64,000 bases of DNA. Origin: Convolutriloba macropyga (taxonomy: Eukaryota). The notes under the pieces are model-generated. The model had not been told where the DNA came from and ran no database searches. It saw only the letters and a list, made by a program, of their open reading frames with translations. The DNA lies in assembly GCF_964194025.1 (NCBI RefSeq), contig NC_134473.1, positions 5,332,001 through 5,396,000 on the forward strand. Reading direction: 5' to 3'. Below are positions 6,610 through 61,150 of the stretch, one piece after another. A program made the translations under genes and the position numbers. Every line of letters begins with the position of its first letter. The first letter of the stretch is position 1.

Positions 6610-7885
6610 TTAATTTCATCTTGTTGATTGTCCACAAAGAATCCATTAACTTTATTTTCTCTGAATTGAACTCCGTTTGAGTTACGGTCTCTACTGTTAT
6701 CTCTAGAATTCTGATTAGAACTGTTACTTCTTCTATAATCCTGTCTTGGACTGCTTGACTCACGATACCTTGTTCGGGAATCGTTTCGATCATATTGTCG
6801 TTCCCTGGAATAGTTCCTATAGTCCTGGGGTCTACGATCGTTGGATCTGCTATTATAGCGTCGATCTCGATTCTCAAAGCTTTGTGAGCGATTTCTGAAG
6901 TTCTCAGATCTAGGATGGGGAGAGTATTGTCTGCGGTTGTCTTGGTTGTAGTAACTGTTACGTGGTCTAGTGTCTTGTCTGTATCTGTTCTGATTTATAT
7001 CATAACTATCTTTTCTTGGACGACGTCCTCTATAGCTTTGATAGTTATCTCTGAACTTATCTCTTTGCTGTGGTTCCTGTCTGTTTTGTTCTTTAAAGTC
7101 TCTGTTTGCATAGCAATATGCTATTGTGTGACCTGACTTTCTGCAAAATTTACAAAATCGTGTGTGATCTTGTTTATTTCTAGGCTCGTTTGGGTTGTAG
7201 GCTGCGCTAATTCTGTGGTTTTTCATTAAACTTGCTAATTCTTAGAGCTGGTCTTTTATACCATCTATCTCCATTTTGTTGTCTATGCTGCTAGATGCTG
7301 TGCCTGTGAAATCACTACTTACTGCAAAACTTAAGTCTTTAGTGCTAACTTGATTTCTAAGTTGTTCCCATGTTGCGTTAGGTGTTTCTATCAAATATTG
7401 ATGCGCTTTTTGTTTAAGTGCTGGAGGAGTTAGTCCTCTTACAAAAAATTCCATACACTTAGTTTGCCTTTGAGCATCTGTGAATGGGTCTGGCCATCCC
7501 TTTTCCACTGCTTTTGTTAGTCTGTGTACGTAACTTTTGATTAATTCATCTGGTTGTCTACGAATGTTTTCTACCTCAATTCGTTTTCTATACTTGTCTT
7601 TCTCGTCTGTGAATCTATTTAGGAAACCTGTCCTAACATCATCCCATGGTTCCGCTGCGGGCAAAGAATCGAACCATTGGGCTGCTGGTCCTCTTAAGAC
7701 TGAGCCAAATAATGCTTTTCTACGTGCGTCATATGCATTTTGTGCATCTCCTTGTCCTGGTCTAATTCCTAATGAAAACTCTATTTTTCTCTCTATTAGA
7801 CTTAGAAAATCTGCTACGTCCTCACTTGGGTTAAGCCTGTAAACTTTTCCAGAGAAATGTCTGGGTATGCTACGATGTTAGCCAT
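6600..7885 (-). pseudogene. gag: gag (capsid domain, CCHC knuckle, RS-rich tail), disrupted
   Basis: ATG 7885 MANIVAYPDISLEKFTG; frameshift ~7830; LRGPAAQWF..W..FLNRF capsid motif; in-frame TAA at 7242-7244; CKFCRKSGHTIAYC knuckle. Confidence 0.9.
6603..6609 (-). promoter_or_regulatory. -1 programmed ribosomal frameshift slippery site U UUA AAC at the gag/pol junction
   Basis: gag ends AAT TTA AAC TAG; the heptamer is in X XXY YYZ phase and the -1 frame runs open (LDESPYKNKK..LYIHAVG) into the protease ORF. Confidence 0.8.
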
Positions 7886-16186: not shown

Positions 16187-17091
16187 TTAGACCTTCTTAA
16201 TAATCTGAATCACATCTTCATCATGCAATAAATGATCTTTCCCACAGTTCTGTGGCGTGTGCTTAGCTGATGTACCCCAAACTAAGGCGTATTTGAATTC
16301 CTTAATTATAGTTTTGTGGATTTTGTTGCAGAAATCTTCAATGGAACATGCCTCGCTTCTGAGAACCACAGGAGCACTGTAGTCGGGCAACTGGCCCTTG
16401 GGTTTCGTGTATATCCTAATCAAGTCCAGGTAATCCCAGATCTTTTCCAGAAGGTCGTCAAAGTTCCACTTATTATGTGCAGATATAGGCACGCAGTGGG
16501 GGATCTTGTAAATAATGTCCAATTCCTGAATTGATATTTGATCGATTTTGTTCAGCACATAAATACACGGGATGTAGATTCGGTTGGCCTCGATGACGTC
16601 AATGAAATCATCTTCGGTTGCGTCGCATTTAAATGTGACATCGGCATTGTGAATCTTGTACTCTGACAGTATAGCTTTGACCGTTTCTTGATCAAGATGA
16701 GTTAACGTTACTGTGGCGTTGAAATTAATTCCTCCTTTTTCTTTCTTCTTGAAATATATACTCGGCGGTTTCTTATTTAACCGAATTCCAAAACCTTCCA
16801 ACTCATGTTCTATTATCTGCTTATGTCCAAGAGGTTTTAGAACGTCCAGAACTATCAATATTAAGTTGCAGGTTCTTGCAACTGCGATTACCTGTTTTCC
16901 TCGACCTTTTCCGTCTTTGGCTCCTTCGATGATTCCAGGGAGGTCCAGAAGTTGTATTTTGGCACCTTTGAATCTGATCACGCCTGGGACTGTGGTGAGG
17001 GTTGTGAATTCATAAGCTGCCACTTCGGAGTACACGCCAGCTAGGTTCGTCAGAAGGGTTGATTTACCAACTGAAGGAAATCCGACGAATC
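16187..17091 (-). CDS. DRG1: developmentally regulated GTP-binding protein 1, exon 2 of 2
   Basis: Acceptor TTGCTTCAG|GA; GFPSVGKS (G1), YEFTT (G2), DLPG (G3), NKID (G4), TGS domain; spliced CDS 1101 nt = 366 aa. Confidence 0.97.
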
Positions 17092-24000: not shown

Positions 24001-24572
24001 AGGACATTCAAAAAGCCTACAACTATTTTTGTACAAAATGTTCCAAAATACCACCAAACGTCAAATTATGGCCCAGTTGTGCCTCTATTTTGTCTCAAAA
24101 TAAAAAAAAATGCGGGTTTTCACTTCAAAAAATTCCAAAGCTAATTGAGTAGTTGCCATGTCGCCAGAGCTCACAAGAAAGTAAAAATGTTCACAATATG
24201 CTCAAAACTGATTGTACTTCAGTTTTTAGCAAAGGCTGCCACTTACAAATTATCAATGATTATGTCATCTAGCTTCAACGAAATTCTACGAAGGCAAGTA
24301 GGAATAAATGCGAGTAAAAAGTCAAGACAGAAGGTAATATTTTTCAAATAAAGCAAAGCAGGTGACGAGCTGATAGAAAATTAAACAAAGCTCAACGTTT
24401 TTGTTCACAAAGTATGCATTAAAACGAGTTTATTTTAACACGTGCATCTAAATGATACTGAACGCAAAAAAGCACCAAAATAAAAACCACCAATCTTATT
24501 TTTACGTTTCATTCGAACTGTTTGCTTGCTACAGCAGTGATCACCAATTCCAGCAAAAACCGTGTAAATAAA

Positions 24573-25775
24573 ATGGCCGTGCCTTATTCAAACACAAAGC
24601 TAAGACCTCCGCGAGGTTTTCAGAACCTTCTAGAAGGATTGGCACGCGAAGTTCTCAGAAATCAACCAGCAGATATCCCTTCATTTGCCGCACAGTACTT
24701 CGCCGACCTCCTACAACGCCGAGAGGAAGGCGGGTACGATCCGGAGGGCTTCCTAGATCCTGCTAACTTGGGTGCCAAGCATGAAGATCGGTACTATAAC
24801 TACGACAAAAAAGAGGCCTTAAGACAACCCGACCTATCAAAATCCCCAACGCCGCCTTCTGAGGGCAGGCCAAAGTCCAGACCTATGAGCTCGAAGCTGT
24901 CACGAGCACCTCCCGCAGAACCGGCGGAGCAAGAAACAGAAGTTTCACAGGAAGCAGAGCCTTCTGCCGAAGAACAAGCACCCGAAGTCACTGTGGAGCC
25001 GGAAGCAGAACCCGAAACAGCTCCTGAAGTTGAGGCACCTCAAGTAGAAGAGCAAGTCCATGCAGAAAGTGCTCCTCAAGAAACGGAACAAGAAGCTCCA
25101 CCTGTCGTAGACGATGCAGAACCAACTAGCACCGAAGCTGAACAAGAACCCGAACAGACAACAGCTGAAGAGGATTCACCGGCAGACGCTCCTGACGATG
25201 TGGAACAAAACCAGGAGCCAGCACCTCAGCAAGAAGAACAAGAGCCGGAACAAACCGAAGTTGCCGAGGACCCAAGCGAGGCTGCAGAACCAGACGAGGG
25301 TGTCGAGACTGGTCGAACTGAAGAGGAACCCCCTGTTGAAGACGAAACGCAGGATGAACAACCCGTAGAGGAAACACCAGCCGATGAAGAGCAAACTACG
25401 GAGGGCGAGGCTGAACAAACAGCAGAGCCAGAAACTGCTGAAGAACAAGTTAACGAAGCTGAGAACGTCGATCAAGAGCCCGCAGCTGATGGCGACCCAG
25501 AGGCTGAAACCGAAGCCGAGCCAGTAGCAGAACCAGAGCAGACAGCATTACCCGATGAGCCAACCGAAGGCGAAGCACCGGAAGAACCAGCCACTGAAAC
25601 TCAGGAAGAACAACCCGGCCCTGCAGAAGAACCGGCGGCTGAGGAACAACCAGCTGACAAAACCGCAGCCAATGAGGAAACAGAACCAGCACCTTCAGGT
25701 GAAGTTGAACAACCCGAAGATAACGAAGCACCTGCAGCTGAAGGCGATGTTGAACAGACAGAAAATGAGGCTTAA
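24573..25775 (+). CDS. SPA17: sperm surface protein Sp17-like: N-terminal RIIa dimerisation/docking domain plus long Glu/Pro/Ala-rich disordered tail
   Basis: MAVPYSNTKLRPPRGFQNLLEGLAREVLRNQPADIPSFAAQYF and EDRYYN match the Sp17 N-terminus; ATG in AAAATGG context; single open frame. Confidence 0.8.
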   Translation: MAVPYSNTKLRPPRGFQNLLEGLAREVLRNQPADIPSFAAQYFADLLQRREEGGYDPEGFLDPANLGAKHEDRYYNYDKKEALRQPDLSKSPTPPSEGRPKSRPMSSKLSRAPPAEPAEQETEVSQEAEPSAEEQAPEVTVEPEAEPETAPEVEAPQVEEQVHAESAPQETEQEAPPVVDDAEPTSTEAEQEPEQTTAEEDSPADAPDDVEQNQEPAPQQEEQEPEQTEVAEDPSEAAEPDEGVETGRTEEEPPVEDETQDEQPVEETPADEEQTTEGEAEQTAEPETAEEQVNEAENVDQEPAADGDPEAETEAEPVAEPEQTALPDEPTEGEAPEEPATETQEEQPGPAEEPAAEEQPADKTAANEETEPAPSGEVEQPEDNEAPAAEGDVEQTENEA

Positions 25776-35300: not shown

Positions 35301-35604
35301 CACCCAGCAGAAAATGATTGAAGCACGGGGTCTTAGAAAAACGAGTCATTTTGAATTATTGAAAATATTCGGCGCATATTTAAAGTGCCGAAATGATTTA
35401 ATTTGCACAACAGCTACATTAATTAGCCGAACTTACAAAATTTATTTCCATATTAACATACTGTTTTAGTAATCTGAGGGAAGCATTAATAGAACAAAAC
35501 GCCTCCATTCTCCGTTAAACCACAATATTATTACCCCCTCAGATACAAAAACTAACATTAAAAAAAGAAACGTCTTTCATTCAAAATTACCAAAATTTTT
35601 GTAT

Positions 35605-36900
35605 ATGACTATTTTAGAAATGTTTAATAGTACAACCACGCTTGACACCGACAGCTTGATCGAAAATATTGGCCCAGCTGCAATGGATCTTCTAACAGGT
35701 GCTCTTGGGCTTTTTGGTTTGGGGTTGACCCTCTGGAGCTACAAAAGGGTCTGTCGTTTACGAGAACAACTAATGTCAAAAAGGATCCTAAAATTTATAC
35801 TTCTTCACGACAGTGTTGGTTTGACTTTCAATGGAGTTACATACAGCGCTCTAAAACTCGGAGGAATTCATCTCGCAAATTACCAGTCGACTTATGTCAA
35901 GGTATTTCAGATCCTTGCTTCGGGAAGCGTTCTCGTATCGTTGCTTAATCTTGCATTGACCGCTTTCGATCGCACACTCAAAGCAATTCGACCCGCAGTC
36001 CATCGAACTGCGTCAAACAAGCGCTGGGTGCAAACTGCGTTATTTGCAGCTCCGTTTATAGGATACCTTCTGATAATCCCAGGAGTAAAGTTTTGCAATT
36101 TTTACCAAAACGATTGCAGATTGAATTTACTGAGCTCAGAATTTCAATTTTTGTTGCCTTTCTCAATTAACGTTGTTTATTTTGGATTTGCTTTATTCGT
36201 CATGACTGTTTGCAATTCGGTTGTATTGTTCAAAAGCACTTTTCTGAGAAGCAAACGGCAGCAGAGAAATAAAAGAGTAATCGAAATGTCGTCGAGAAGT
36301 CACTCCAAGTCACAACAAAATTCATGTGCCCGAAGCGTCAATATCCCGTGTGACACAAGAATTTATAAACTAAACAAACAAAGCCCATGTCGCAGAAATT
36401 CCGATTCCGATCGTTTCAAAAGTACAAATACTGTAAAGTATTTAAACAATTATGACTTCAAACCTAGAACTGACGGACCATATGAGATCAGCACTCGCAA
36501 GACATCAAGACAAAGCGCTGCAGAATTGGATTGGGACAACATGAAAGACCATTTTGAGAACATCGGACAACTGAATTTTTCGATAAAACGGCAGCGGAAG
36601 CAAAACTTGCCAAGTCATGATGTGAAAATGGTCGGCAACGGTACCCCGAACAAACCAAACATTCTCAGACTCTTAATTATTTTCAACACATCGTACACGA
36701 TTCTTGTGTTTACTATCAGTTATATTAGCAATCAAGGTTTCAAAAAAGAAGGCGATGAGAACGGGTACGAGTTTGCATTGTCATTCATGCAATTTGCAAC
36801 AGTTGTGAATCAAATGTTGACTACTCTGTTCCTATATATGTCCAATCAAGAATTTCGACAAAATTTGACACCGAAAAACCGTTCGTCAGTTGAAGCTTGA
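35605..36900 (+). CDS. orphan rhodopsin-like (class A) GPCR, intronless, long third intracellular loop
   Basis: Seven hydrophobic segments, TM2 L..HD, TM3 LALTAFDRT (DRY-like) followed by AIRP, ECL2 cysteines, TM7/H8 FLYMSNQEFRQ, N-terminal NST sequon. Confidence 0.8.
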   Translation: MTILEMFNSTTTLDTDSLIENIGPAAMDLLTGALGLFGLGLTLWSYKRVCRLREQLMSKRILKFILLHDSVGLTFNGVTYSALKLGGIHLANYQSTYVKVFQILASGSVLVSLLNLALTAFDRTLKAIRPAVHRTASNKRWVQTALFAAPFIGYLLIIPGVKFCNFYQNDCRLNLLSSEFQFLLPFSINVVYFGFALFVMTVCNSVVLFKSTFLRSKRQQRNKRVIEMSSRSHSKSQQNSCARSVNIPCDTRIYKLNKQSPCRRNSDSDRFKSTNTVKYLNNYDFKPRTDGPYEISTRKTSRQSAAELDWDNMKDHFENIGQLNFSIKRQRKQNLPSHDVKMVGNGTPNKPNILRLLIIFNTSYTILVFTISYISNQGFKKEGDENGYEFALSFMQFATVVNQMLTTLFLYMSNQEFRQNLTPKNRSSVEA

Positions 36901-46622: not shown

Positions 46623-48199
46623 TGTTTTAACCAATCAAAGCACACCTTTCAAGATTATCAGTTAGCAAGAAAGACAGATAAAATATTTCACGTAGTTTTC
46701 TATGCTTCCGAATGCAGACTTGCCCTTCTCAAATTGCTGACCAGCCTAGCAAAATGCTCTGAAATACAGCACGATCAGTTAGACAAATTCTCGAAAAACT
46801 TGATAATTTTACGTTTCTCAGCAAGATAACATTTTAATATTAAAAAATGACTGTAAATTTAAACACGGAGGATTCGAATCGATTTGAAACGTCTAAGAGG
46901 AGAGGGCACAAGGACAATGAGTATTAAGTAAATCATAACGTAGAACTGTTAAAAGTTTACACTAAGTTACCAACCACTATTGAAAAACTTTTCCTTTCGG
47001 TAACAACAAGGTCATTAACATATCGACCAGTAAATTTGAATTTGCTAAGGGGAAATTTATAGGAGTGAAGAATTCAATTTTTTGTTAAATTTTTGGGTTC
47101 CAATAATGTTATCTTTCTGTTTTTGTGAGATCTTTATATAACAGCTGCACATATCAACAATTCACCAGGAATTTCAGCCGGACCTTGACGCTCATTCGCT
47201 CTTTTAACTGGTTGCCTAGTTTTCTTTTATTATTGGCGTATCTACAAATAACTTGTGGTGCGGTGGCCTTTCTGCATCTATACTGGTCAGTTATCGTGGG
47301 CGCCAATGATTCTTAAGGCAACTGAAAAAAAAAACAATTTTACTCCAAACTTGGTAGTCTGTCACTCTTATTGACTTTGAATTTGCTTAATTCTGAAGTA
47401 ACTTCCATTCTGAAATTCAACGGATCCATTGCATCAAAAGAATAATTACTCACACATGCTCACACGAAGAGGGAAATCGTACGAAAGGACAAATCGTAGG
47501 AAAAGTAAAAATTTGGTTTTGACGTTTCGTAGGAAACGTAAAAATAGGAACCGGCAGGGGCATTTAATGCAAGGAATGTGGCCTAGTAAATTTTTGTTTT
47601 GTGTGCAAGAACCGACTAGGGTGAGATTCAAACGCACGACCTCCAGAGTCCTTGACGGAATCGTCACCACTCAGCTATCAGTCCCTTGTCCTTTCTTATG
47701 CTACAATCCTTTTTACTTTAGCAGCAAACTTCACTTCGGAGTGCGAGTTATTGGGATCAAGAAGAGAGCAGCGAAGTGTAAAAAAGTCACTTGAAAAGTC
47801 ACAGAACGTTCTAGAACAAAAATGCAAAATTGTCAAGCAAAAATTTTGCATAATAAAGACACATTTTGCATAATCATATTTCGTTCGAGAGCAACTAAAA
47901 AATGAAGTCTCAAAGGATGGATTAAGTTTTTCGGTCGCATTTTAATGGTGCAACTTTTATCTCTGCAAAAGATATCGATGCTCCAAAACTGAGTCGGCAA
48001 AAATCCAGGCTGGCCTTTAAATAAATTGGAGGATTGTAATCAAGAATAGAAAATTTTTCTGTTATAAAAATAAAATCACTATCCGCTTAATGATATTTGA
48101 TATATAAACGCATAAAATTATGTAAAATCATTGAATAATGTAGAGCACCATTAGAGCATGAAATGATAGATAAGATTACATTAGCGTCCATTTCCAGAT

Positions 48200-49039
48200 T
48201 TATACTAAAAACTTGTCAACATAGCCTGTATCAGAAAGCTCATCCTTCGTTTTCTTGTCGAACTCGTCGATTATCTCCTTGCTCAGTTTCTTCTCATATG
48301 ACTTCGATTGTCCTTGGCCAATGAAAGAGTCAAATATCTGAATTCGATTTGCCATGCTCTCAATAGACGTTGCCTTCTTTATATCAGCCAGTTTCTCATC
48401 AGAAGGCTCGAATCCCAGAAACTTGCCCAGGTTCCTCACGTTTGTTTCAAAGTCGACTAACAGCTCTTCATAAAACATAAAGAAACAAAGTTCTGGGTTG
48501 CTGTTGATATGCTTAAACCACTCTTTGCACCATTGCCAGTAATCACCATAGTTGACAGTTCCTGATAAAAAATCCTGTACGAATGAATCAAAGCTTTCCG
48601 GTGGATCGATTCGCTTGTTAGAATGGTAAAATTTGTGAAAGCTTATCACGGCGTCTTTAGGGTTCCGAAATACAAAGACGCATTTCCTTTTCTTCTCAAT
48701 AATTTCTTTAGGGGCCGCCTGGACTGGCAAATGCGTCTTGAAGAATCTTGGAGACGATTGACGGGCAACTCTCACATCCACTGGCTCAGAAAAGAAATGA
48801 GAAACAAGTTCCAAGAACGTAAAATGATGGGCCAGTTGTTCGCCGTCAGTTACTGTTTTCAGGAACTCGGTGTCATGTTTGAGAGCTAGCATGATATTCT
48901 GCGTCCAGGTGGTACCAGTCCGAGGATACGAAAGGAGAAAAACATCATCATCTCGTGTTTCCAGATTATATGTACGCCCTATAGTGTCCTCAGTATGACT
49001 TCTCGTAGTTTGAAAGTATGTACCCCGGATCAAAACCAT
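48200..49039 (-). CDS. cytosolic sulfotransferase (SULT family), intronless
   Basis: SYPRTGTTW (5'-PSB loop), FKTHLP (catalytic His), RNPKDAVISF (3'-PB), YGDYW, YEEL. Confidence 0.93.
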   Translation of the reverse strand: MVLIRGTYFQTTRSHTEDTIGRTYNLETRDDDVFLLSYPRTGTTWTQNIMLALKHDTEFLKTVTDGEQLAHHFTFLELVSHFFSEPVDVRVARQSSPRFFKTHLPVQAAPKEIIEKKRKCVFVFRNPKDAVISFHKFYHSNKRIDPPESFDSFVQDFLSGTVNYGDYWQWCKEWFKHINSNPELCFFMFYEELLVDFETNVRNLGKFLGFEPSDEKLADIKKATSIESMANRIQIFDSFIGQGQSKSYEKKLSKEIIDEFDKKTKDELSDTGYVDKFLV

Positions 49040-49094
49040 TTTGTCTAAAAATTTATTGTTGATTGTAGTTAAACTTTAAATAAGACGGCCCCAT

Positions 49095-49440
49095 AAAATT
49101 GTAGAGGGTACTAACCATAGGCTCTTTCGATCTACCAGCAACTGGCAAAACTTAGACGAAGCTCTAAAATTCAACAAAAACATATGGCGAAAAATTCAAT
49201 ATCCGGAAAATTGGTCGACAGGCATTGTAAAATCAGACAATCGGAAAAATTTTAGGTGACTAAAAAAACCTCAAAAAGAAAAGAGGAATGCGAGTCAAAC
49301 AATAAGCTGAAGCAGAATGACACACCCACACTTTTCTTACAATATAGAGGCCAATTAAGCATTAGACTTACAGAAAAGCTACAAAAGATAAACCATCTTA
49401 CAGTGATCTACAAAACACGGAAACTATAAACCTAGTTGAG
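49095..49440 (+). mobile_element. short Penelope-like fragment (RT thumb/linker region)
   Basis: Translates IVEGTNHRLFRSTSNWQNLDEALK..QYPENWSTGIV and PTLFLQYRG..YKTRKL, homologous to VQGTVHSIFNAT..QYP of the PLE at 51051-51248. Confidence 0.7.
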
Positions 49441-50199
49441 ACCAAAAAATTGTTCACCCCCTTTTGGGAAGGGAAAACCTGAGCAACACGAGGTTATAGC
49501 AAACGGTTAGGGTAACCTATAAGCTATCCATGGACCCATGAACGTTATGGCATCATACCCACAGTTGTGGCTATTAGCACTTTTATGATGCAAAATTGGC
49601 ATTTTTTGATAGTTTGTCAACTATTAATTTTTTTGATATATTGTCATTTATGAAATTTGTGAAATTGTTTATTTTATGATAATTTAGTTCATTAGAGCTC
49701 TAAATGACTCAAACCCTACATTTGAGTCATTCAGAGCTACGTAATAACCATCGCTGCTAATGTCAACAAAAGCAAACATTGCAGTAATTTGACATTTACT
49801 ACGTAAACAGATAATTAAAGACCTTTACCTAATTAAACAAAAAGAAACAAATGATAACGATGTCATAATTGAAATGTACCTGATTTTTCACCCGAATCGT
49901 TTGAATAGTAAAATCATTTTGTTTTTAGAGCCATTGGAAACTGTTACCCATAGCTGTTGGCTCTCAGATTAGAATATAACTTGGTTCTTTAATAATTGTA
50001 GTGTTTTATGATAAATTTTGCTAGATATTAAAGTTATTTAATTTCTAATTTACTTAAGTTTTCATGACAAGACTTAAGAAACATTACTAACACTGGCTTA
50101 AGCTTTATACACTTCAGCGCGTAATTGAACATGGATTATCACAATAGGATTTTCTTTTCTTCATTCAAAATGAAATTACATTAGAGCAGAAGTAATTGT

Positions 50200-52780
50200 C
50201 AATTAAAACATGAATTGATTTAAAACACGAACGTTTTCGAACATTGCGTTCATCGTCAGGTTTAAAAACGAAGTATATAATTTTGCTTTGACTCTAATTC
50301 TAAGAAATAAATTGAACTAAAATCGAATTTCTGAAATCATCTACAGTTAAAATTGCATTTCAATCATTTTATTTACACTTATTACACTAAAATCATTTGC
50401 ATTTTTATTCTGGAGTTTTTGAAAATCCCGGGTACAATGCTTTATATTCCGGAGAAAGGATTTTCACTTTCATTCCTATCTGCTTTTAATTTTTATTTGT
50501 TGGGGGTGACAAAGTTTCGAATTAACATGTATCAGAATAGTTTTTGAATTCTAAAAGTCAAATTGTTGCATTTGAACTAATACTTCAATGTCAATTCCCG
50601 CCTCGCCAATTGATTGCGGTTTCAGCTCTTTGATGCAGATCGCTTCTGTCGTCATTAGTTTTTCAACCCCGCGACATGTATCAAGAATCTCCCATTCAGT
50701 ATTATGCGCTGTACCACAACATTCAACGAGGTGTTGTCCCTCAGGGGAATCCTTCTTTTGATGCTCTGTAGTTCTAGTGGCAACATGTCGGCAGGTTTGG
50801 CCAACATAGATGGAACTGCAGCCATTACATGTAACTTTATATACCACATTGGATTTCATATTCTTATCAAAAGATGATTTCAGGGTGGGCAAGCAAGTTC
50901 TTAGCTTTCTTGATGTGAAAATGATTTAAATATCACACAATTTTTTTCAGTATACTTGCAAAATTTTGAGTAATATTTTCTCTCTATTGAACAAAAAACC
51001 TCAGTTTAGGTTCCCTATTGTTAAGATTTTTTACTTTTCTGAGATGTTGTTCAATTTGGGGGGAGGGGATTTGTTGTGACCTTTTCCCTCGTGACTATTA
51101 TATCCAACGTCCCGTTAACAATACTAGAGCACCGCTCAGTTGGATATTGATTTTCTGTCCCAATCTCCTGACTTTTCTTGAGAGCTACATTAAAGGATTG
51201 CCAGTAACCGGTCGCATTGAAAATACTATGCACAGTCCCTTGAACCACATTTTTCTTATGTCGTAATGGTGCACAGCTACGGAAATTTAGGACTATTCCA
51301 GTATCAGTGGATTATGATACCAATGACAGCTAATTTTTCGATCTTAGTTCAAGTTTATGTTTAGATCTAGAAATGCCAAGTCTCCACTACCGTTTGGTGT
51401 CTCAAGAATGAATTGTAACTTCTTGTGAGGAAAATTTGCATACTCAAGGTGATCTAGAGGGTTCCCCTTGACCGTGCATACTATATCATCTACATCCTTT
51501 CTGAATAAACTCAATTCCTGTGTGTCCTCTTTTGTGTTTTATTCCGCACATTAGGAACAGGTCCAAACAATGTTCTGCATGGTCACATACTCTGTGTTAG
51601 TGATGTCTTGGCTTTTTGCATGAAACCAGTTTTTGCATGGTTCGCACTCGACCCCTTTCCCTCAGAAAGTAACGCGTCGGTTACAGTCATTTCATATCAC
51701 CTTTTTGTGAGGAGTATTGTTCTCCCTTCCCTCATTTGGTTTCTGTAGGCATTCTTCAAAATATTTCATCCATAAATTTGCCAAAATTACCGCCAGCGAA
51801 GCACCCATTGCTAAACCGTCCAATTGAGTGTACCACATTTTATTACCCTTAGAGTGAACATTAGCTACGGCTAGTCTCAAAAGGCTCTTTATTGCTGACC
51901 TCGGAATCTCAGGTACCTCGTCAGTGGAGTACAGTTATTTAAGCTCAATTTCAATTGCCTCCTCAATCGGTACATTTGTGTAAAATCTTTTAACATCGAA
52001 AGATACAACTAGCTCATCTCCATCCAATTTGATGGCCTCTAGATCGGCTCTGGCATATTTCGATTTAGTTTCAATATTTGCATCCGGTAACCTCTCAAAA
52101 AAGGGAGAGAGAAATTTATTGAGGTTCTCGTAACTGCTACCAGGTATTGACAGAAGAAGCCGAAGCAGCGTACTGCTTTTATGAACTTTAGCAAGTCCAT
52201 AAGGCCTGGTCGGTTATAATCCAGTTGCCCTCAGCCGTTGATAAATTTTTTCACTTATCTTTCCCTGTTTAATTAATTAGTGCAAACTGCAATTTATCAG
52301 TTTCTCCGTTTTATTTTTGGATCAGCACTTTCTCCATTACGAAATTCAAACTGACTAGAACTGAGGATTTCATTTAGTTTTTCCGAGTATGTTGTCTGTT
52401 TCATAAACAAAAACAGCAACCACTATCAAATGGTATAGCTAGTAGTTTTTGATCTTTCAAAAAGTCATTAGCTTCTTTAACCCTTGTATCCATTGGTGTC
52501 TCACGTAATTTCCTGACGTACCATTTGTCAGACAATTTTATTTCACATAACTTATCACCATCAGTGTTGTTCTCCCTTAACTCACAAACTAGTCTTTCTA
52601 CATCCGCAAGGGAGTGCACTTCATTAAATTTGTCCCTGACCGGATGCTTTGGACCTCATGATAAGACGTCCAGGACAACTTTGGCAGTTCAGTTCCGTCC
52701 AGTGTAACAACATCATTATGAGATCCATTCCGCAAAGGCCTGTCCTGTCTCACAGACAGTCCTTCAATGAGTCCGAACGA
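50200..52780 (-). mobile_element. Penelope-like retroelement (RT with internal PHD finger + C-terminal GIY-YIG), 5'-truncated, decayed
   Basis: GPKHP, IPFDSG (DKG motif), YGLAKVHK, SFDVKRFYTNVP, QLDGLAMGASLA, DVDD, AFLD, VVYKVTCNGC..YVGQT..R..EH; ORF ends RELTLKY* at ~50577. Confidence 0.93.
50215..50268 (-). ncRNA. minimal type I hammerhead ribozyme motif in the PLE 3' region
   Basis: TTTAAAC-CTGACGA-T-GAAC gcaat GTTC-GAA-AACGTT-C-GTGTTTTAAA: CUGANGA and GAAA core, 4-bp stem II, palindromic stem III, UC cleavage site; stem I imperfect. Confidence 0.7.
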
Positions 52781-55700
52781 TTGGTTTCTTCTACAAGAAT
52801 ATTAGACAATCGGATTCACTGAAGAACCAGGCCGGCAAAGATCTCGAAAAACGGGCTGTGATATTCGTTACAGCCGAGATTTTTGAGCAGCAACATTTGA
52901 TTTGCTGACCCAGACAACAACACGAGCAGTAACGAATCTTCAATTCAATTTCGTGTACTAAAACAAAATGCTTGCTATGGCTGGAGAGAGCCCCGAAAGA
53001 TATTTGAAAACGACTGAATGCAACATTTCAGTCCCATTCCGGAGATTAGAAAATGAGCAAATTGGATTGTTCAAAAAATTGGTTTTGTCCGGACATACGA
53101 TGATTTGGAAAAAAAATTGACGCCAAAAGCGGCAAATTTGGAACCAAAATTATTTGAAGAATTTCGATGCTGACACAGAACGCGATATGGGCGAAAAGAA
53201 GAAGACACTCAAATGGCTAGTTGAACAAATACTAAAACTTGGAAAAACTGAAAATTATCGCAGCTGCTTTTTCAACAATCGAAAAGACACTTTGCTATTC
53301 TAAACAATAGCCGAAAAATACACATGGCTTTACAGTGAAGCAACTCGAGGAAGATCTGGAACTGAAAATTAAGACGACTCCTGCAAGCAAGCATTGCGTA
53401 GCAAACTGGAACAGCTGTTAATGAAATTAGATTCAACTAACGAATAAATCATACAAATTGTGCATTCAGACACTACTACGGTCTGGTTGACGACTTTAAG
53501 TGAGAATAATTATTATTGTCGACTTATGCTAAAACAGTACCTGCAAACCTGCAAACCTGCAAAAGGAAATCAAATATTGCTGTTGTCATCAATATCGGCT
53601 GTTGTTAAAAACCTATATGAGACTTTAATTGAGTCAAGAAATGGAGCAAAAAGAATTGTCGAAGACAATGTTGAGGTCTCTTCTAGGCATTCTGCTACAC
53701 AGGGAAGCAAAAAAGAACCCAGTCAACTCGCGATCGTCCAGAAGGCAACAGATTGACAAAATGGCGCTTGAAAACCTAAGAGCTGAAAAACAGCTAAAAC
53801 CGAGAGCTAAAATCGGGAGCGTTAGTTGGAGTTTGAACATAAGCGTGAAGAAGTAGAACTACGTTGTCGGCGAAAATAATTACATTTACGGCAAAAACAT
53901 CATCAACAACAACAACAACAGAAATTACGTCTAATGTTGAAACAAGAAGAAGACAAACTACGTCTGCGACACCAAAAGTGAGCCTCTGAAAATGACTAAA
54001 GAAAACTCAAGCCGATGAAGAGCGAGGGCTTCTGGAAATTGAACAAAAAAAAATTCAGGAGCATCTGTGTTGCAGGCAGACGACTTAGAAGGAGTTGGAT
54101 TAAAATAACGGCAGGCAGTCAGATTCAGTGGCCCATCAGGTTGGCCCTAGACGGCCAATATCTTCTATTGCTGCGACTCATCCTCCTAAGAATTCCACAC
54201 ATGACAGAGATGAAAAACCTTTCAGCGTCTTCCAGAAAACTACCCCCATTGTTCCAACCCGTTGTAGGACATTTCTCAACGCAAATTCCTAAATCAATTA
54301 GGACGACTCAACCGCAAACGCATTTGCCCTTGACGACGTTCCAGCAATAAGGCACGTCAGCATTTCAAAACAAATACAGAAGCCAGAGTCCCAAGCACAA
54401 CTCTCGTCCTTTAGCATCTAATGTTGAAGATTCTACAAAATTAAAAGATTCAGAATGTCCATTCAAAAATTGACTGCACGCCATCTGGTGTTGCAAAAAA
54501 ACTAAAACAATTAACTGAATGAACAACGAGAACATGTGCAGAAGTTCAGATTTTGTTTCAAGTGTCTGGGACCTGGTCATCGATCAAGGACTTGCAAAAG
54601 TAGAACTTGCAGTAAACCCATTTATGGACGGCGACAATTTTTTGCACTGTGACTTCTCTAAGAAAGAGGCTACGACAAGTGCTTCAGTTTCTACGACAGC
54701 TGTAGCGGCAATCATCACACGAGGAGGACTCCCTGTGGCGCTCATCGAATTACTTTATGGTAGCCGCACCTCCCCGTACTAGCAATGTGTGATACATGAT
54801 CCTCATTTGTCTTGTAGGTAAGTCAATCGTATCTACACTGCAACTGCAAGGCCGAAAAGCGTCTTTGTCAGTAGCAGGAATCCATGAATCGAAAGATGTC
54901 AAGAGTAAAATAGTACCGATAGTTCGACCATTGACAACATTCCAATTTTTTTTGTTCATGAAAACCTGAAATTGGGATCTGCAAGGGTTGAAAGATTGCT
55001 ACTCACTTTGAGGATTTTGTCAAATCAGAGCTACAATCTGAACAAATTTCAATTTATTCTTTGACAAGACTGTTATAACATCCCTTACCCATTAGATTTC
55101 AAATTCAGACAATAAACTTTCACCGTTTGCAGTGAAATTGAAACTAGGATGGGCGTCCTCTACCAGTGAAGCAAGCAGCAACGCCTGCTACAACAGCAAC
55201 GTTAACCGCAGAAGACAAGTGACAAAGCTAGTTGATTAGATGTTGGAACATTAAATCCTATGCCTCAAACTGTGATGTCACAGGTCAATGGAAAGATGAA
55301 GAGAGAGTAATCAAACAGTAGAGCAAACAATTCAATTCATCGATTAATCCGATACAAGTGACAATGAGACAATGATGTTATAAATTTTTTACCTGATTAT
55401 TTACTTTAATCGAATTGTTTGAATAGTGCAACCATTTTATATCTAGAACCATAAGAAACTGTTACCAAGAGCAGTTGGCTCTAACTTGATTACGCTAGAA
55501 CTTGATTCCTTAGTAATATTATTGTTTTATGCTAAGTTAAGATCTTGCGATTTCTAAGTTAGTTTGTCAATCATGACAAGAATTTATTAACTTGACTAAC
55601 ACTGGTTGAAGCCTTACAAACGTCAGCACGAGATTGAACTCAGATTATCACAACGAATTTCCTTAATTTCAAAATTGAAGTTACAGGCCTCTAATACGTA

Positions 55701-56679
55701 CGAGAGAATAATTGTTTCTATGAGATTATTAGACAATTGGAATCAGTGAAGAACCAGGCCGGCATAGAGCCTGAGAGCCAGGTTCTGATGTACTGGATGC
55801 CATTCTGTCTATGTCGGATACACTTTCAGACACATAACCACGCGAATGGCAGAACATCAATTAAAGTATTCAACGGTAGGCTAGTATGTAAGCCAATGTT
55901 GTGGCACATCACGCGCGTTTGATTGCCGTATAATGAGCCAGTGCAACGCGAAAAAAGTTTTGACTCTCGAAACAAAATATATAGCACAAACGAGGCCACT
56001 GCTGAACACATGTAATTGGTACCGAAGCCAAGAGTTGACATAGAAATACTAGTTAGCAGTTGTCACTTTATTCAATTCGAAAAAAATACTTTAGCGAATC
56101 AAAACCTTGAAATGTTCCAAAATGTTACCGAAACGGTAGAATTCAAATGCTATGCGAAAATCAAAAATTGAAAGATTCAAAGATGTTGATAAGAAAATCG
56201 AAAACGCATTGGAAAAAGAAATTACAGAAACTTTGTTTTTATGATAAACAATATTCCAAGAACCTCTTACTTTACAAATTTGCTTTTTAATTGAATTTGA
56301 TTCATTTCAATTGGAAATAGATTAAATTTTGTTGCGTTTGACTTGATGACGCTAGTTATAGCGGATATGTTTGTAAATTAAATTTAAAATTGACTTAAAT
56401 TTTTAAAAAAAATTAGACTATCAAAATACAATTTAACTGCCTAACAAGTAGATCATTAGTGCAAATCAGGAAATCATAATTAGTATATTAGTATATTAGT
56501 GCAAGTGCAAATTATCAACAGCATGGGCGAACAAAAAAGTCTTTTGCTAAGATCACAGGTAACCGAAATACCTCAATACTTCTTTTTTCAACACAACAGC
56601 TAGAAAAAGGAACAATCGATTTTGATCTCTGCGAATACTAAACATCGAAACAACAAACATGAAGGATTTTTTAAAAGAT

Positions 56680-56870
56680 ATTTATTTACTGTAATTTTTC
56701 AAATATTTACTTTGATTTTTTATATATGAATAGGGATTTAACTTAATATGAATAGGAATTTAACTATTCATAGGAATTTAACTATGATTAGGAATTTAAC
56801 TATTTACTGTGATATTTCAAATATTTACTGTGATTTTTTAATTATGAATAGGACTTTAACTATTTATTTT
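56680..56870. repeat. compound minisatellite (18-bp units with TAGGAATTTAACT core, plus ATTTACTGTGAT units)
   Basis: About five TAGGAATTTAACT-like units interleaved with four ATTTACT(G/T)T(A/G)AT units. Confidence 0.8.
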
Positions 56871-57289
56871 CGACAATTTTTTAATTGCAAAAAAATTATA
56901 AAGCCAAGCAATGTTTTTTTCGTTTTAAAACGTCTCATATGTGAATTTTTTGCGTTTACGCCGTTTGATTAAAACAGAAAATGCTTGTATATATTATACA
57001 TTTATTGAAAATAAAGCATCTTTTCGTTTTCATATTCATTACGCTTTCAATTATAATCTTCAATATTTCGCCCGTATTGAGTAATCCATATTTAAGAATT
57101 TTTTGTTCAGTTTTTATAAAAATTACAAGGCCTTAGTTTAATGCCAGAAGTTCATTTGAGTTGGGACTACCATTGCCTATCGAGCTCTGGTAAAATTTGG
57201 AAGAAGTGAATATGTATATTTGGTTTCCATATCAGTGTTCAGAAAAAAAAACTACGGTTTTATTTGAAGGAGGAAGTGATTTAAAATTA

Positions 57290-58930
57290 ATTCTTATTTT
57301 AGAAACAAACTTTTTCGAGCTTTAAAATCATCGCCAGGTTAAAACTGTTACCCTAATTGTAGAGGGTAGGGATAAAATGAAAATGTATTTTCTGATACCA
57401 TAATTTAAACAATTCTAAGGAAAATCTAAAAATCTTCAAATCGAAAAGTTTCATATACATAATATTTACATTTTCATTTTTAAATCATTTATCTTTTTTA
57501 AGAAATTTTCTTTCCTGGTTTTTTATTTTAGTTATGTTATTGTATTTCTAGGGTAACTCAGAAATTTGTCCTAACCCTAAGCTTTCCTCTTGTACAGATT
57601 TTGCAGGTTTCGTTCAACAATGCGGAAAAAAATTTTTGCTTTATTGTTTTAGATCAACATCCAATACATATCACGTATCACGTGAGACTAGAGATATTTG
57701 TCTCAAGGTAATTTTAGGTCGGTGAGGCACATTAATAATTTTTGCGTTGTGAATTTATTTCGCAATCCATATAAATTTTTCAGTGTGCTAGCAAAACTTT
57801 GCGTTTAGTTGCCTCTCTATTGTAGCAAAATTGTTGGTTTTCATGAGATCTAGTCTGGTTTTTCTGAAGGTCTTTGTTTCTTGTACTCAATATATTTTTA
57901 CTTCCAATTATTATCTTCTATAAATTCTTGTTCACTGTTTACAAAGACTATTCATAAGACTATTGCTTTTTGGTTACCCAGTTCATGTTTTCTTTCATGC
58001 ACCAGATCGAAGGCTAATCAAATAATTGTCGCGTTCGAAAACCGTGTGAACTTTCTCTTAAAACCACTTTTTGCTTCTTTTGAAGAGGTGAGCAGCGGCG
58101 AAAATTCAGTTTTATTCCTGTTTCAGTTGCTTTTGTGTACCAAAAACAGTAAGGTGTATTATCGTTGCTCACCTTTACCAATGACATCAAGCCATATGTC
58201 TTTAACACTTTCTGAAACTTATTGCTTGTTTTTGTGTTACGAAATTGCAAATGTTAAGTATTTGCTCGATTCAGCACTAACTGTGCAAATAATGCAGTCC
58301 ACATTCCTTTTGAACAATCCTTTACTTTAACTTAGTTGTTCATTGCCTTATTAGGTACCAAAAAACAATCATTCTCCATTATAAGGGTATTTTTTTACTT
58401 TTTTTTTTAGCTTTTTGCTAGAAATAGGTTTTTGCTTCACTCGAATTCGATAATTTTTTCTCAGAGACTGACCTATCGGTTGCATTCTTCAATTCTCATT
58501 ACGATCAGCTCTGGAGATTTTTCCACTGAGCTCTAATTTTGACTGGGATGCATCAAAAACTTCATCTATGCGTTTGATAGTTTTGAAGCTAGCGATTCAG
58601 CCAGAGCTGGATTATTCAATTGTACATATCAGATGCCGTTAAGCTTGAGTGGAACATTTGTAAATGCTAACTTTAATACTTTTTCAATTGGGTCTCTTGT
58701 GCCGTGTTGCTTGCGTAGAGTTTATTTGGAGCGATTTGATAAGCCTCTCTATCCGGCACATTGGTATACAAACTCTTGTAGTCAACAGATACTCTTTGCT
58801 TGACATCATCAAGACATAATTGAAAAAGAAGCACTTCTAGCATCTTTTGGGTTGGTTTAAATAGTTGCGTACGTTAGTTTCCGCATAAACGGTGCTAAAA
58901 CTTTTGTATTATTTCTTTAGGTTTGTTGAT
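57290..58930 (-). mobile_element. second, heavily decayed Penelope-like element with the same architecture
   Basis: SVDYKSLYTNVP, QLNNPALAESLASKLSNA*MK, PHD relic ECNR*VSL*EKIIEFE*SKNLFLAKS, GLFKRNVDCIICTV, WYTKATETGIKLNFRRCSPL, CIGC relic of the GIY-YIG region, hammerhead relic at ~57296-57346. Confidence 0.8.
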
Positions 58931-59629
58931 GGCAGGACCTAAATCATTTCTGTGATAAAAAGGAACATTAATTTGAAACTAAATGGGCAACATCAAACAC
59001 TTTTTTTCCTTTCTCACACAAAATATGAGGTTTACTAAATAAACTTTTACTAACGTTTGCAATAAGGTCAAAATTTTTAAGGAAGAAAATTAGCAGCCTC
59101 GCATCTGAAAAAATGACTGTGTTTATTTACAAGTGGAGCAAATTGTGCAGTGTTATTAGTAGCACGAGTGATACACGAGATAATAGTTGTCTCGATTGAC
59201 ACTTCTAGTTTCCAACTGGTTGGCACATTCTTGGCAAATTAATTTTAAGAAAGTAAACATTTGGATGTTTATTATCAATGTTAGCGAGAACATATAGAGA
59301 TCAATGATCCTTGGTTTGTATAAATATTGGATAACTTACCACCTTTAATTGGTTTTTCACTGGGAATTGAATAAAACGCTTTATTTCAAACACCCCTGTT
59401 CAAAACATTCGCAATTTGAAAGCCATTGAGCAGACGTGATCTCATACTGACTTTGTTTGGTGTTTCGAGAATTTTTATGGTCTTCCAAACTGTCATCATA
59501 TTTAATTTTCAAAGGATTTTATAGCAATCTGAATTTCTGGCGTAATTTTTTTTCTAATGTTTTTATAGTCTGTTTTGCTTTGAACTTTCGGAAAAAGGAA
59601 GGCTTCGAATAATTTGTTTCTCCTCTCAT

Positions 59630-60235
59630 TAGTTTCATCAGCAACTCTACATTGCGGTTTGTTTTTATATATATCAAAGTGAACAGACATCTAACATTTT
59701 CAAGATTTTTGATTCATCAGCAGGTGTCATTTTGTGGTGTTATGAATGCTATTTTATGTTGTAACTGCTACAGTTAGAATGTTTAGCCAATAACAAATAA
59801 CAACTAAAAACATTAGTCTATTAATTATATGTAATAATGTCCTATTAAATCTTTCTACAAATACTGTTTTTGAATCACAATATGTTGAGCATAATTATGA
59901 CTTATGTTCTTTAAGTAAAGATTTAAACGTTTTATAATAGAACTCACTATCTCTATCAACTCATAACTTTTCTGGTGTTCTGCATTCTAGTAAAATTGTT
60001 TTGAAACCATTAGTTATAGGTATAACAGATTTTTTCATTAAGAGTATAGCCCAAGCATAACTAATAAATATATCTCTAACTGTTAATATAAAATTAAAAT
60101 TTTTGGAATTTTCACATAAACATGACCTACTAATTAAATCGCCATGTTTCAATTTTGGGTAACGTTATTATTTTTTCTCTTTGCAAAGTGCAAAGTTGTC
60201 AATAGTGGTGAGAGTATTTCTTCAGCTAATTCTTT
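59630..60235 (-). pseudogene. Polinton/Maverick-type retroviral-like (rve) integrase relic
   Basis: ELAEEILSP..ETW..DL..FILTVRDIFISYAWAI..RTPEKL*VDRDSEFY..VERFNRTL..W..IH..MTP: DDE triad and flanking motifs typical of Maverick integrases. Confidence 0.8.
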
Positions 60236-60349
60236 TTTTTTTCTTATTGTTTCTTTTACTATAGTTAAAACAATTTATCTACTTTGTTTATATATATAGT
60301 AATAACTGTTTTTTTAATTCTTTTATATACGACAATTAAAAATAAAATC

Positions 60350-61150
60350 CGGTTATTCTAAAGTAATAAATTTTCTTAATAAAATTTAATCAGATATTTT
60401 TAACATCTCATTATATAATCCATCATATCTTGATTTCGTTTCTAAAATAAATAATTCTAATCTCTTGTTCTTCGGATCTGCAATTGTGATAACTAAATCA
60501 CCAGAATTAGTAAGTGCACTACCTTAACTACCACTTTGCTGATCTCTGATGGAGCGTGGCTCATCAACAAAGTTGCCACTATGTAGACTTCTAATTGCAA
60601 ACTTTCTAATAACTCTCGCTCCACTACTTTTAGTATCTGTTGTTCTGTAATTAGGTCTATTATTAAGTGAACATTTTGAAAATATTTTAGATAATCTCTT
60701 TTAGTTTTATGCCATCAGGTGTTATAGATACATCTACATCATTCATTTTATATTGGTTTGATGATGTACCAACTTGTTCTAACTCTATTGGTTTAATTTT
60801 TGTTGTCCCATTTCTACCAGAATGCTAATCATCTCACTGTCAGCTGTAATTGTAATACTTTTGTAATCAGGTATCGTTAAGGGTAATGGGAAGTCTATAT
60901 TTTCTAATGCTTGTAGTGTTTGTTATTTATTAGACGAAGCGTCAATCGTCAAAACTGATTGTTCGTCAAGCCGATCAGCGAAGTTAAGTTGCAGATCATT
61001 TTGTGAATTTAATTTTTCTTTATAGATCAATTGACTCTATTTTTTTATAATGTTCTTGTTGTTTTAATTAAACTTCAAATCTATTTCTTCGTTATATTTT
61101 CTGTTTTATAGATTTTTCAATTTTGTTAATGCTTCTAAATTATTTTTAGT
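60350..61150 (-). pseudogene. decayed ORF upstream of the Polinton integrase, probably a Maverick accessory gene
   Basis: C-terminal DPKNKRLELFILETKSRYDGLYNEMLKIS resembles the DP..RL.LL..E..AG....NE motif I recall from uncharacterised Maverick proteins; same strand as and adjacent to the integrase. Confidence 0.4.

What the first reader, a model, noticed from the sequence alone, without database searches (positions are those of the whole stretch)
58270..58620. A second, independently decayed PLE carries the same insert at the same RT position
Seen: QLNNPALAESLASKLSNA*MK...EECNR*VSL*EKIIEFE*SKNLFLAKS...GLFKRNVDCIICTV aligns closely with copy 1 (DCNRRVTF*GKGVECEPCKNWFHAKS...SLFRKDVDDIVCTV), although the two copies are far apart at the DNA level and most zinc ligands are eroded here. 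Inference: the PHD is an old, family-level feature rather than a chance insertion into one dead copy.
Basis: partly seen in the sequence, partly recalled or inferred. Interest (0 to 1): 0.75.

Follow-up and report, generated by a model that had tools for sequence, protein, structure and literature searches.

The report
Second dead Penelope element with PHD finger
This is an old, badly decayed fragment of a jumping gene (a Penelope-like retrotransposon) in an acoel worm genome. It confirms that a whole lineage of these elements carries a PHD zinc finger inside its reverse transcriptase, but the scan had already noted that lineage many times in this genome.

Summary

**What copy 2 is**
- Window 57281-58935 (minus strand) is a 5'-truncated, heavily decayed Penelope-like element (PLE) in Convolutriloba macropyga.
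- Between RT motif 4/B (ends 58560) and motif 5/C (58294-58305) it carries an insert of about 85 codons, the same size and place as in copy 1 (50188-52768).
- The insert alone aligns to an intact relative's linker plus PHD with score 75, against 24 +/- 4 for shuffles. Only 1 of 8 zinc ligands survives.

**The two copies are not a segmental duplicate**
- In an ML tree built without the insert columns, copy 1 pairs with P0278 (100/99) and copy 2 with the intact 708-aa P0268 (98/87). Both relatives lie elsewhere in this genome.
- Forcing the two copies together is rejected (AU p = 0.00085).
- The flanks do not align. The one shared stop sits on a CGA (CpG) arginine codon.

**The PHD is a clade feature**
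- All 19 sampled relatives with the insert form one group (93/92), set against 4 PLEs whose RT4-RT5 gap is 32-38 aa with no PHD.
- dN/dS of the finger is about 0.18.
- Intact copies occur in this genome, in an assembly that shares a >=90% cluster with Symsagittifera roscoffensis, and in Tara Oceans marine metagenome contigs.

**Limits**
- Function is untested.
- The only PLE PHD inserts I found described (Chlamys, in algae) sit at other positions.
- Earlier agents of this scan noted the same lineage repeatedly on other DNA of this genome (48 notes).

The parts
57281..58935 (-). Copy 2: a 5'-truncated, decayed Penelope-like element of the P0268-type subfamily. It corresponds to aa 187-631 of the 708-aa intact relative, plus the 3' UTR.
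   Evidence: Frameshift-aware alignment to P0268: 206/445 identical, 22 stops, 12 frameshifts. blastn to L012: 58900-57652 at 67.4% (E 2e-99) and 57614-57281 at 71.6% (E 2e-41). ML tree places it as sister of P0268, 98/87.
58560..58935 (-). Copy 2 RT motifs 1-4 remnant. The motif 4/B remnant (NNPALAESLASKLSNA*MK) ends at 58560.
58491..58559 (-). Copy 2 linker between RT4 and the PHD finger. It must be read after a frameshift near 58556.
   Evidence: alignment to the P0268 linker. insert-only score.
58348..58490 (-). Copy 2 PHD-finger remnant. Ligand status: C1 lost, C2 kept (58482-58484), C3 to F, C4 to S, cage Trp to L, His to L, next Cys to S (58410-58412), then G and a stop.
   Evidence: ligand table.
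58294..58305 (-). Copy 2 RT motif 5/C remnant. It reads NVDC where intact relatives read YVDD.
57636..58293 (-). Copy 2 RT motifs 6-7, thumb, linker and the first residues of the GIY-YIG motif. About 275 nt of the endonuclease that should follow are deleted (between 57652 and 57614).
   Evidence: L012 positions 4377-4690 have no counterpart in copy 2.
57281..57614 (-). Copy 2 3' UTR.
   Evidence: 71.6% identity to L012 4690-5039, which lies downstream of the ORF stop at 4627.
50188..52768 (-). Copy 1: a nearly full-length dead PLE of the P0278-type subfamily. Its PHD lies at 51548-51695 and its GIY-YIG domain at 50554-50925.
   Evidence: blastn to L013 at 83.3% over 2612 nt. Pfam PHD E = 6e-5 and GIY-YIG E = 6e-4 on pieces. 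Tree 100/99 with P0278.

Best explanation
Copy 2 is an ancient, independent, 5'-truncated insertion of a Penelope-like retrotransposon (PLE) with a C-terminal GIY-YIG endonuclease. It belongs to a lineage whose reverse transcriptase has a PHD-type C4HC3 zinc finger. The finger is flanked by two flexible linkers and lies between RT motif 4/B and the catalytic motif 5/C.

Copy 1 and copy 2 come from two sister subfamilies of that lineage. Both subfamilies still have long or intact ORFs elsewhere in the Convolutriloba macropyga genome. Both subfamilies therefore inherited the finger from a common ancestor, and after insertion each copy decayed on its own.

These steps are shown: homology and position of the insert, separate ancestry of the two copies, one PHD-bearing clade, and purifying selection on the finger.

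This step is inferred, at roughly 40%: in active elements the finger acts as a chromatin reader. Its nearest solved relatives are the H3K4-methyl-reading fingers of KMT2C, MLL1, PHF2, BPTF and Pygo2, and the cage tryptophan is nearly invariant. In this reading the finger would hold the RT/endonuclease complex on nucleosomes during target-primed reverse transcription and so bias where the element lands. In copy 2 itself nothing is functional.
For: Insert homology: scores of 52 and 75 against about 24-25 +/- 4 for controls.

Same place and size: the RT4-end to RT5 distance is 85 codons in copy 2, 89 in copy 1 and 90 in P0268.

Separate ancestry:
- Copy 2 vs P0268 is 46% aa and 67-70% nt, but only about 62% nt vs P0278.
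- Copy 1 vs P0278 is 73% aa and 83-85% nt.
- The tree has starred branches 100/99 and 98/87, and AU p = 0.00085 against a copy1+copy2 clade.

Subfamily split under selection: P0268 vs P0278 codon-position identity is 0.82/0.86/0.50. PHD dN/dS is 0.18, while the linker is 0.6-1.5.

Clade feature:
- 19 rows have a 94-120 aa RT4-RT5 gap with C4HC3, against 4 rows with 32-38 aa and no finger.
- The label needs one change on the tree, support 93/92.
- Pfam RVT_1, PHD and GIY-YIG all score above cut-off in P0268.

Structure: AF2 model with pLDDT 83.6. The finger (340-389) lies between low-confidence linkers at 326-333 and 390-395. The top fold hits are TERT.

Nearest solved PHDs: KMT2C, MLL1 PHD3, PHF2, BPTF, Pygo2.
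Against: - Copy 2 is so decayed (end branch 1.36, 45% of columns filled) that its exact placement is less certain than copy 1's.
- P0278 is itself a 488-aa ORF with two altered ligands, so part of the A-subfamily branch is neutral decay.
- Only four insert-less PLEs were sampled, and no Repbase reference clades were available, so 'single gain' is not proven against 'gain plus losses'.
- No hammerhead ribozyme was found.
No binding, targeting or integration-site data were examined.
Confidence: 0.85

Rival explanations
1. The two copies are a post-insertion segmental (tandem) duplicate of one dead element, so copy 2 adds no independent evidence.
For: - They have the same orientation and lie about 6.8 kb apart.
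- Each has an inverted PLE fragment near its 3' end (49080-49459 and 55789-56049).
- They share one TGA stop (51664/58463) and one Cys-to-Ser AGC codon (51613/58412).
Against: - Each copy is much closer to a different element elsewhere in the genome.
- The AU test rejects them as sisters, p = 0.00085.
- The flanks do not align.
- Only 1 of copy 1's 5 stops is shared, and that codon is CGA in both intact relatives, a CpG hot spot that is also hit in other fragments.
Confidence: 0.02
2. The insert similarity in copy 2 is chance, caused by low-complexity AT-rich sequence read through many stops.
For: - Copy 2 has about 22 stops and 12 frameshifts in 445 codons.
- Only one ligand survives.
- Pfam finds nothing in its pieces.
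Against: - None of 1000 controls reached the score against copy 1.
- z = 13.7 against the P0268 insert, and z = 6.7 against P0278.
- More distant subfamilies score at noise level, as expected for true, graded homology.
- The insert is collinear with significant RT matches on both sides.
Confidence: 0.01
3. Copy 2 is simply an older copy of the same subfamily as copy 1, so the pair shows only one lineage at two ages.
For: With the first set of short fragments, copy 2's insert matched only the copy-1-type fragment P0005. The two subfamilies are sisters.
Against: Once the full-length P0268 was available, copy 2 matched it far better than P0278: protein score 634 vs 205, and DNA local score 815 vs 134. 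The tree gives 98/87.
Confidence: 0.08
4. Functional rival: the finger is not a histone reader. It could instead be a structural zinc module or a nucleic-acid or partner-binding module next to the active site. For example it might hold the template RNA or target DNA, or recruit a host protein as the Pygo PHD binds BCL9.
For: - It sits between motif B and motif C of the palm.
- Precomputed Pfam hits favour the Pygo subtype.
- Several subclades end in C-x-C instead of C-x2-C.
Against: - Flexible linkers on both sides suggest a tethered module rather than a part of the palm.
- The best sequence matches are H3K4-methyl readers, and the cage Trp is nearly invariant.
Confidence: 0.4

Closest known systems
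Canonical C-terminal EN+ Penelope-like elements (Penelope/Poseidon type; Arkhipova 2006, and Craig et al. 2021, PMC8557442)
   Same: - A single ORF.
- A TERT-like RT with the DKG motif and core motifs in the relatives.
- A C-terminal GIY-YIG endonuclease with two Cys inside the GIY-YIG core.
- No CX2-5CxxC motif in the RT-EN linker of P0231/P0268, as in Penelope/Poseidon.
- Frequent 5' truncation, and neighbouring inverted fragments.
   Different: There is an extra module of about 70-90 aa (linker, PHD finger, linker) between RT4(B) and RT5(C). No hammerhead ribozyme was detected with Rfam. Placement among the named clades was not tested.
Chlamys PLEs of Chlamydomonas with PHD insertions (Craig et al. 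2021, PMC8557442)
   Same: A PLE whose ORF has taken in a PHD finger.
   Different: Those are N-terminal-EN elements of green algae. Their finger lies between RT2a and RT3(A), or inside the EN. Here the host is an animal, the EN is C-terminal, and the finger lies between RT4(B) and RT5(C).
PHD fingers of CR1-type non-LTR retrotransposons (Kapitonov and Jurka 2003, as cited in PMC8557442) and other TE-borne PHDs
   Same: A TE-encoded PHD of similar sequence type. The profile search also pulled in a LINE-like protein with an AP-endonuclease-like stretch (by eye) and two such fingers (P0190), and a protein with three such fingers (P0169).
   Different: In those proteins the finger is a terminal accessory domain, not an insertion in the RT catalytic core.
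H3K4-methyl-reading PHD fingers (KMT2C, MLL1 PHD3, PHF2, BPTF, Pygo2)
   Same: They share the C4HC3 pattern and the W-x-H-x2-C core. E-values are 5e-5 to 8e-3.
   Different: Those are host chromatin proteins. Binding by the PLE finger is untested.

Membership tests
Penelope-like element (C-terminal EN+) | RT with PLE/TERT-like core motifs in order | tested here: met
   Copy 2 aligns collinearly to P0268 aa 187-631. P0268 scores Pfam RVT_1 33 bits against a cut-off of 29.6. The model's best fold matches are TERT 3du5/6usr.
Penelope-like element (C-terminal EN+) | C-terminal GIY-YIG endonuclease with the CCHH motif (two Cys between GIY and YIG) | tested here: met
   Met in P0268 (GIY-YIG 25.8 bits against a cut-off of 22.6) and in copy 1 (20.5 bits, C-x2-C present). 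In copy 2 only the first residues of the motif remain (about 57636-57690) and the rest is deleted.
Penelope-like element (C-terminal EN+) | N-terminal conserved motifs including DKG | tested here: inconclusive
   FDKG is present in P0231, P0140 and P0218. It has decayed to FDSG in copy 1. Copy 2 is 5'-truncated, so it cannot be scored.
Penelope-like element (C-terminal EN+) | Hammerhead ribozyme motif in the pseudo-LTR | tested here: not met
   There was no Rfam match at E <= 1 in window 48000-61000, and none at E <= 0.1 in L012, L013 or L008. Divergent HHRs could be missed.
PHD finger (Pfam PF00628) | C4HC3 ligand pattern with canonical spacing | tested here: met
   Complete in P0268, P0005, P0035, P0042, P0048, P0265 and others. 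Copy 1 keeps 6 of 8 ligands and copy 2 keeps 1 of 8.
PHD finger (Pfam PF00628) | Score above Pfam's gathering threshold | tested here: met
   Against a cut-off of 24 bits: P0268 27.2, P0231 26.5, P0265 26.4, P0035 31.0, P0042 31.1. The copy 1 piece scores 23.4, just below. Copy 2 gives no hit.
PHD finger (Pfam PF00628) | Zinc binding and histone-tail binding | not testable with these tools
   Only sequence similarity to H3K4me readers and a moderately confident fold (pLDDT 64-85) are available.
Chlamys PLEs with PHD (Craig et al. 2021) | N-terminal EN, with the PHD between RT2a and RT3(A) or inside the EN | tested here: not met
   Here the EN is C-terminal and the finger lies between RT4 and RT5. 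The description comes from PMC8557442.

The most novel reading that the evidence does not exclude
A whole clade of animal Penelope-like elements has built a histone-reading PHD finger into the catalytic core of its reverse transcriptase. The clade is found in acoels and in unidentified marine plankton hosts. The enzyme that copies the element would then also read chromatin state and choose integration sites by it. That would be a targeting principle not described for PLEs, and one placed unusually, inside the polymerase palm region.
Probability: 0.35. Interest if true: 0.7.

Novelty: new variant of a known kind. Interest (0 to 1): 0.45.

Why it matters
How PLEs choose their targets, and why their RTs resemble telomerase, are open questions. 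A conserved PHD finger under purifying selection, tethered between motifs B and C of the RT, gives a concrete hypothesis to test: chromatin-guided target-primed reverse transcription.

The material for such tests exists. The P0268 cluster has 104 near-identical member sequences in a sequenced, culturable acoel.

For this particular stretch the value is more modest. It shows that two sister subfamilies had the finger before either copy died, and it rules out the trivial explanation of a chance capture in one dead copy. The scan had already reached the main point on other DNA of this genome.

Tried and rejected
- **Copy 2 assigned to the copy-1 subfamily (rejected).** I first assigned it there because, among the short fragments, only P0005 matched its insert. 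That changed once the intact P0268 was found.
- **Codon-position test between the two dead copies (weak).** The protein-guided alignment gave 0.57/0.62/0.38. That alignment favours positions 1 and 2. The DNA-guided version is weaker, at 0.68/0.69/0.59. I therefore rest the selection argument on intact relatives.
- **Rfam hammerhead search.** Nothing was found.
- **L001 as a source of a longer ORF.** That copy is interrupted by what reads like a LINE RT C-terminal fragment (not scanned).
- **Window ORFs of 150 aa or more.** None is a PLE.
- **The profile search.** It returned mostly short ORF fragments. Full-length proteins came only from cluster members and from a second word search with P0231.
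- **Literature.** The only description of PHD in PLEs that I found is Craig et al. 2021. I found nothing on acoel PLEs.
- **Not done.** Broken copies were read through with X at each break only.

Full report
**Source of the window.** The window matches NCBI GCA_964194025.3, record OZ077304.1 (75,671,662 bp), at 100% over 20.8 kb. A DRG1-like protein whose longest listed contig has that same length is annotated Convolutriloba macropyga, an acoel. An alternate-haplotype contig (L006) is collinear with window 59037-46273 at 95.5% identity. Both PLE copies are therefore present in both haplotypes.

**Observation.**
- Copy 1 (about 50188-52768) is a nearly full-length dead PLE. Its pieces hit Pfam RVT_1, PHD (E = 6e-5, 23.4 bits) and GIY-YIG.
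- A frameshift-aware alignment of copy 2 to copy 1 runs from 58935 to 58207, with 85/251 identical residues.
- tblastn extends the collinear match down to about 57676.
- The insert alone scores 52, against 25 +/- 4 in 1000 controls (dinucleotide shuffles, protein shuffles, random window segments). None reached it.
- At the DNA level blastn sees only 81 nt at 68% inside the finger and 55 nt at 76% further 3'. The flanks do not align.

**Relatives.**
- A word search with the 80-aa RT4 piece of copy 1 returned 64 short ORF fragments, found only in ENA assemblies. The seven whose contigs I looked up lie in ERZ25071359, ERZ25071366 and ERZ25074608; the first is this species. They fall into at least five divergent groups.
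- Wherever a fragment reaches far enough, a C4HC3 finger follows the GLAMGASLAVILANLW motif and precedes RYVDD. Four of the fragments score above Pfam's PHD cut-off.
- A profile of these fragments, searched against 1.84 billion representatives, gave 1635 hits at E <= 1e-3 and 237 at E <= 1e-10.
- Cluster members and a second word search supplied long and full-length proteins. These are P0268 (708 aa, cluster of 104 members, C. macropyga contig), P0231 (808 aa), P0262-P0265 and P0267 (826-891 aa) and P0278 (488 aa).
- P0268 scores above cut-off for RVT_1, PHD and GIY-YIG. Its RVT_1 match stops just where the insert begins.
- In 19 sequences the RT4-to-RT5 distance is 94-120 aa, with the Cys/His pattern. 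In four more distant PLEs (P0273, P0276, P0282, P0284) it is 32-38 aa, with no finger.
- Hosts outside this genome: two >=90% clusters contain Symsagittifera roscoffensis proteins XP_063711989.1 and XP_063722382.1. Two Tara Oceans marine metagenome contigs carry long or full-length ORFs.

**What copy 2 is.**
- Copy 2 aligns much better to P0268 than to copy 1. The figures are 206/445 identical residues, score 634, and window 58935-57636 matching aa 187-631.
- At the DNA level, 58900-57652 matches L012 3093-4377 at 67.4% (E 2e-99). 57614-57281 matches the 3' UTR, L012 4690-5039, at 71.6%.
- About 275 nt of the endonuclease are deleted between these two blocks.
- Copy 1 instead matches L013 (P0278) at 83.3% over 2612 nt.
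- An ML tree of 23 rows, built without the insert columns, places copy 1 with P0278 (100/99) and copy 2 with P0268 (98/87). These two pairs are sisters (100/100). All 19 PHD-bearing rows lie on one side of a branch (93/92), so the label needs only one change.
- Forcing copy 1 and copy 2 together costs 19.1 log-likelihood units (AU p = 0.00085).
- The insert follows the same pattern. The 248 nt strictly between RT4 and RT5 of copy 2 score 75 against the P0268 insert (z = 13.7) and 48 against P0278 (z = 6.7). They score at noise level against more distant subfamilies.
The correct frame, after a frameshift near 58556, matches the P0268 linker.

**Independent decay.**
- In the aligned 250 codons, copy 1 has 5 stops, and copy 2 has 12 stops and several frameshifts.
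- Only one stop is shared (51664/58463, TGA). That codon is CGA (Arg) in both P0268 and P0278. Other fragments carry Gln there or end their ORF there. This is as expected for a CpG hot spot.
- Both copies also carry AGC (Ser) at one ligand Cys. P0278 has TAC there and P0268 has TGC. Given the tree, these are parallel changes.
- Ligand count: copy 1 keeps 6 of 8 and copy 2 keeps 1 of 8. The RT4-end to RT5 spacing is 89 codons in copy 1, 85 in copy 2 and 90 in P0268.

**Selection.**
- P0268 vs P0278 DNA is 72.7% identical, with codon-position identities of 0.82/0.86/0.50.
- By Nei-Gojobori counts for P0268-P0278, the finger has pN 0.20 and pS 0.62 (dN/dS 0.18). RT4 gives 0.05, and the linker gives 0.60 (0.6-1.7 over the pairs whose dS was not saturated).
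- Pairs of more distant subfamilies keep pN at 0.3-0.5, with synonymous sites saturated.
- The sample is small (49 codons). P0278 is not fully intact, so 0.18 is probably an upper estimate.
- Copy 2 vs P0268 (0.73/0.75/0.63) and copy 1 vs P0278 (0.87/0.88/0.80) look mostly neutral, as expected for dead copies.

**Structure and likely function.**
- An AF2 model of P0268 built from 25 aligned sequences has mean pLDDT 83.6 and pTM 0.78.
- The finger (about 340-389, pLDDT 64-85) is bounded by low-confidence stretches at 326-333 and 390-395. It lies between the motif B helix (303-321) and the motif C hairpin (401-413).
- The best Foldseek matches are TERT, in line with the known PLE-TERT relationship (PMC8557442).
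- By sequence, the finger's nearest solved relatives are KMT2C, MLL1 PHD3, PHF2, BPTF and Pygo2. The Trp of the W-x-H-x2-C core is nearly invariant.
- From established knowledge of those fingers, I infer histone H3 tail reading as the most likely role. It is not shown. A structural, nucleic-acid-binding or partner-binding role is about as likely.

**Comparison with what is known.**
- Craig et al. 2021 (PMC8557442) describe PHD insertions in five Chlamys families of Chlamydomonas. Those lie between RT2a and RT3(A) or inside the N-terminal EN. The paper also cites PHD fingers in CR1 elements.
- I found no description of a finger between RT4 and RT5 of an animal C-terminal-EN PLE.
- The PHD-bearing acoel lineage is therefore a new variant of a known kind.
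- Earlier agents of this scan had already reported it many times on other DNA of this genome, and on copy 1 of this window.

**Verdict.**
- The segmental-duplicate and chance explanations are rejected.
- The inference of an old, lineage-level feature is supported, mainly by the intact relatives.
- Copy 2 itself is a dead fragment with no function.

Noticed in passing
window 55390-55768 (minus): This contiguous stretch matches the sequence just 5' of the part of copy 1 matched to L013 (52756-52841, 77%) joined directly to the sequence just 3' of that part (49877-50180, 70.5%). It looks like a UTR-only deletion derivative or a solo pseudo-LTR of the same PLE family. It also suggests that copy 1 really spans about 49877-52841.
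   Followed up: partly
window 49080-49459 (+) and 55789-56049 (+): There are two further PLE fragments on the opposite strand, matching P0268 aa 487-600 and the EN aa 621-708. Each lies about 0.7-1.2 kb from the 3' end of a minus-strand copy. This tail-to-tail arrangement recalls the inverted/tandem insertions described for PLEs. In all, five PLE pieces lie within 10 kb.
   Followed up: partly
window 50220-50266 and 57296-57344; L012 4976-5020: A short 3' UTR segment is conserved between the two subfamilies: 89% between copy 1 and L012, and 73% between the two window copies. It could be an RT recognition element. Rfam finds no hammerhead there.
   Followed up: no
window 51611-51613 and 58410-58412: Both dead copies carry the same AGC (Ser) codon at one zinc-ligand Cys. 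P0278 has TAC at that site and P0268 has TGC. I read this as parallel change, but the coincidence is unexplained.
   Followed up: partly
P0190 and P0169 (hits): The PLE-finger profile also finds a LINE-like protein with what looks by eye like an AP-endonuclease stretch (not scanned) and two similar PHD fingers, and a 565-aa protein with three tandem copies of the finger. The same PHD type seems to circulate among several kinds of marine-invertebrate transposon.
   Followed up: no
window 59900-60300 (minus): The translation reads like a decayed integrase core (…DRDSEF…, …VERFNRTL…) just upstream of the 5' break of copy 2. It may be the element that truncated copy 2. This was not checked with Pfam.
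   Followed up: no
window 1513-7226 (minus): A run of long ORFs is present. One of 830 aa carries RNase H, the integrase zinc domain and the rve core (a Ty3/gypsy-type pol). It looks like a fairly young LTR retrotransposon.
   Followed up: partly
window 16187-17035, 24522-25775, 35599-36900, 48200-49039: Host-gene ORFs are present: a DRG1-like GTPase exon, a protein with an RIIa domain, a weak 7tm_1 receptor match, and an intact sulfotransferase. The sulfotransferase's start codon lies only about 40 bp from a PLE fragment.
   Followed up: partly
L006 vs window 59037-38000: The alternate haplotype contig of the same species differs by about 4.5% and by several indels (for example around 46273-43741). 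This points to very high heterozygosity.
   Followed up: no
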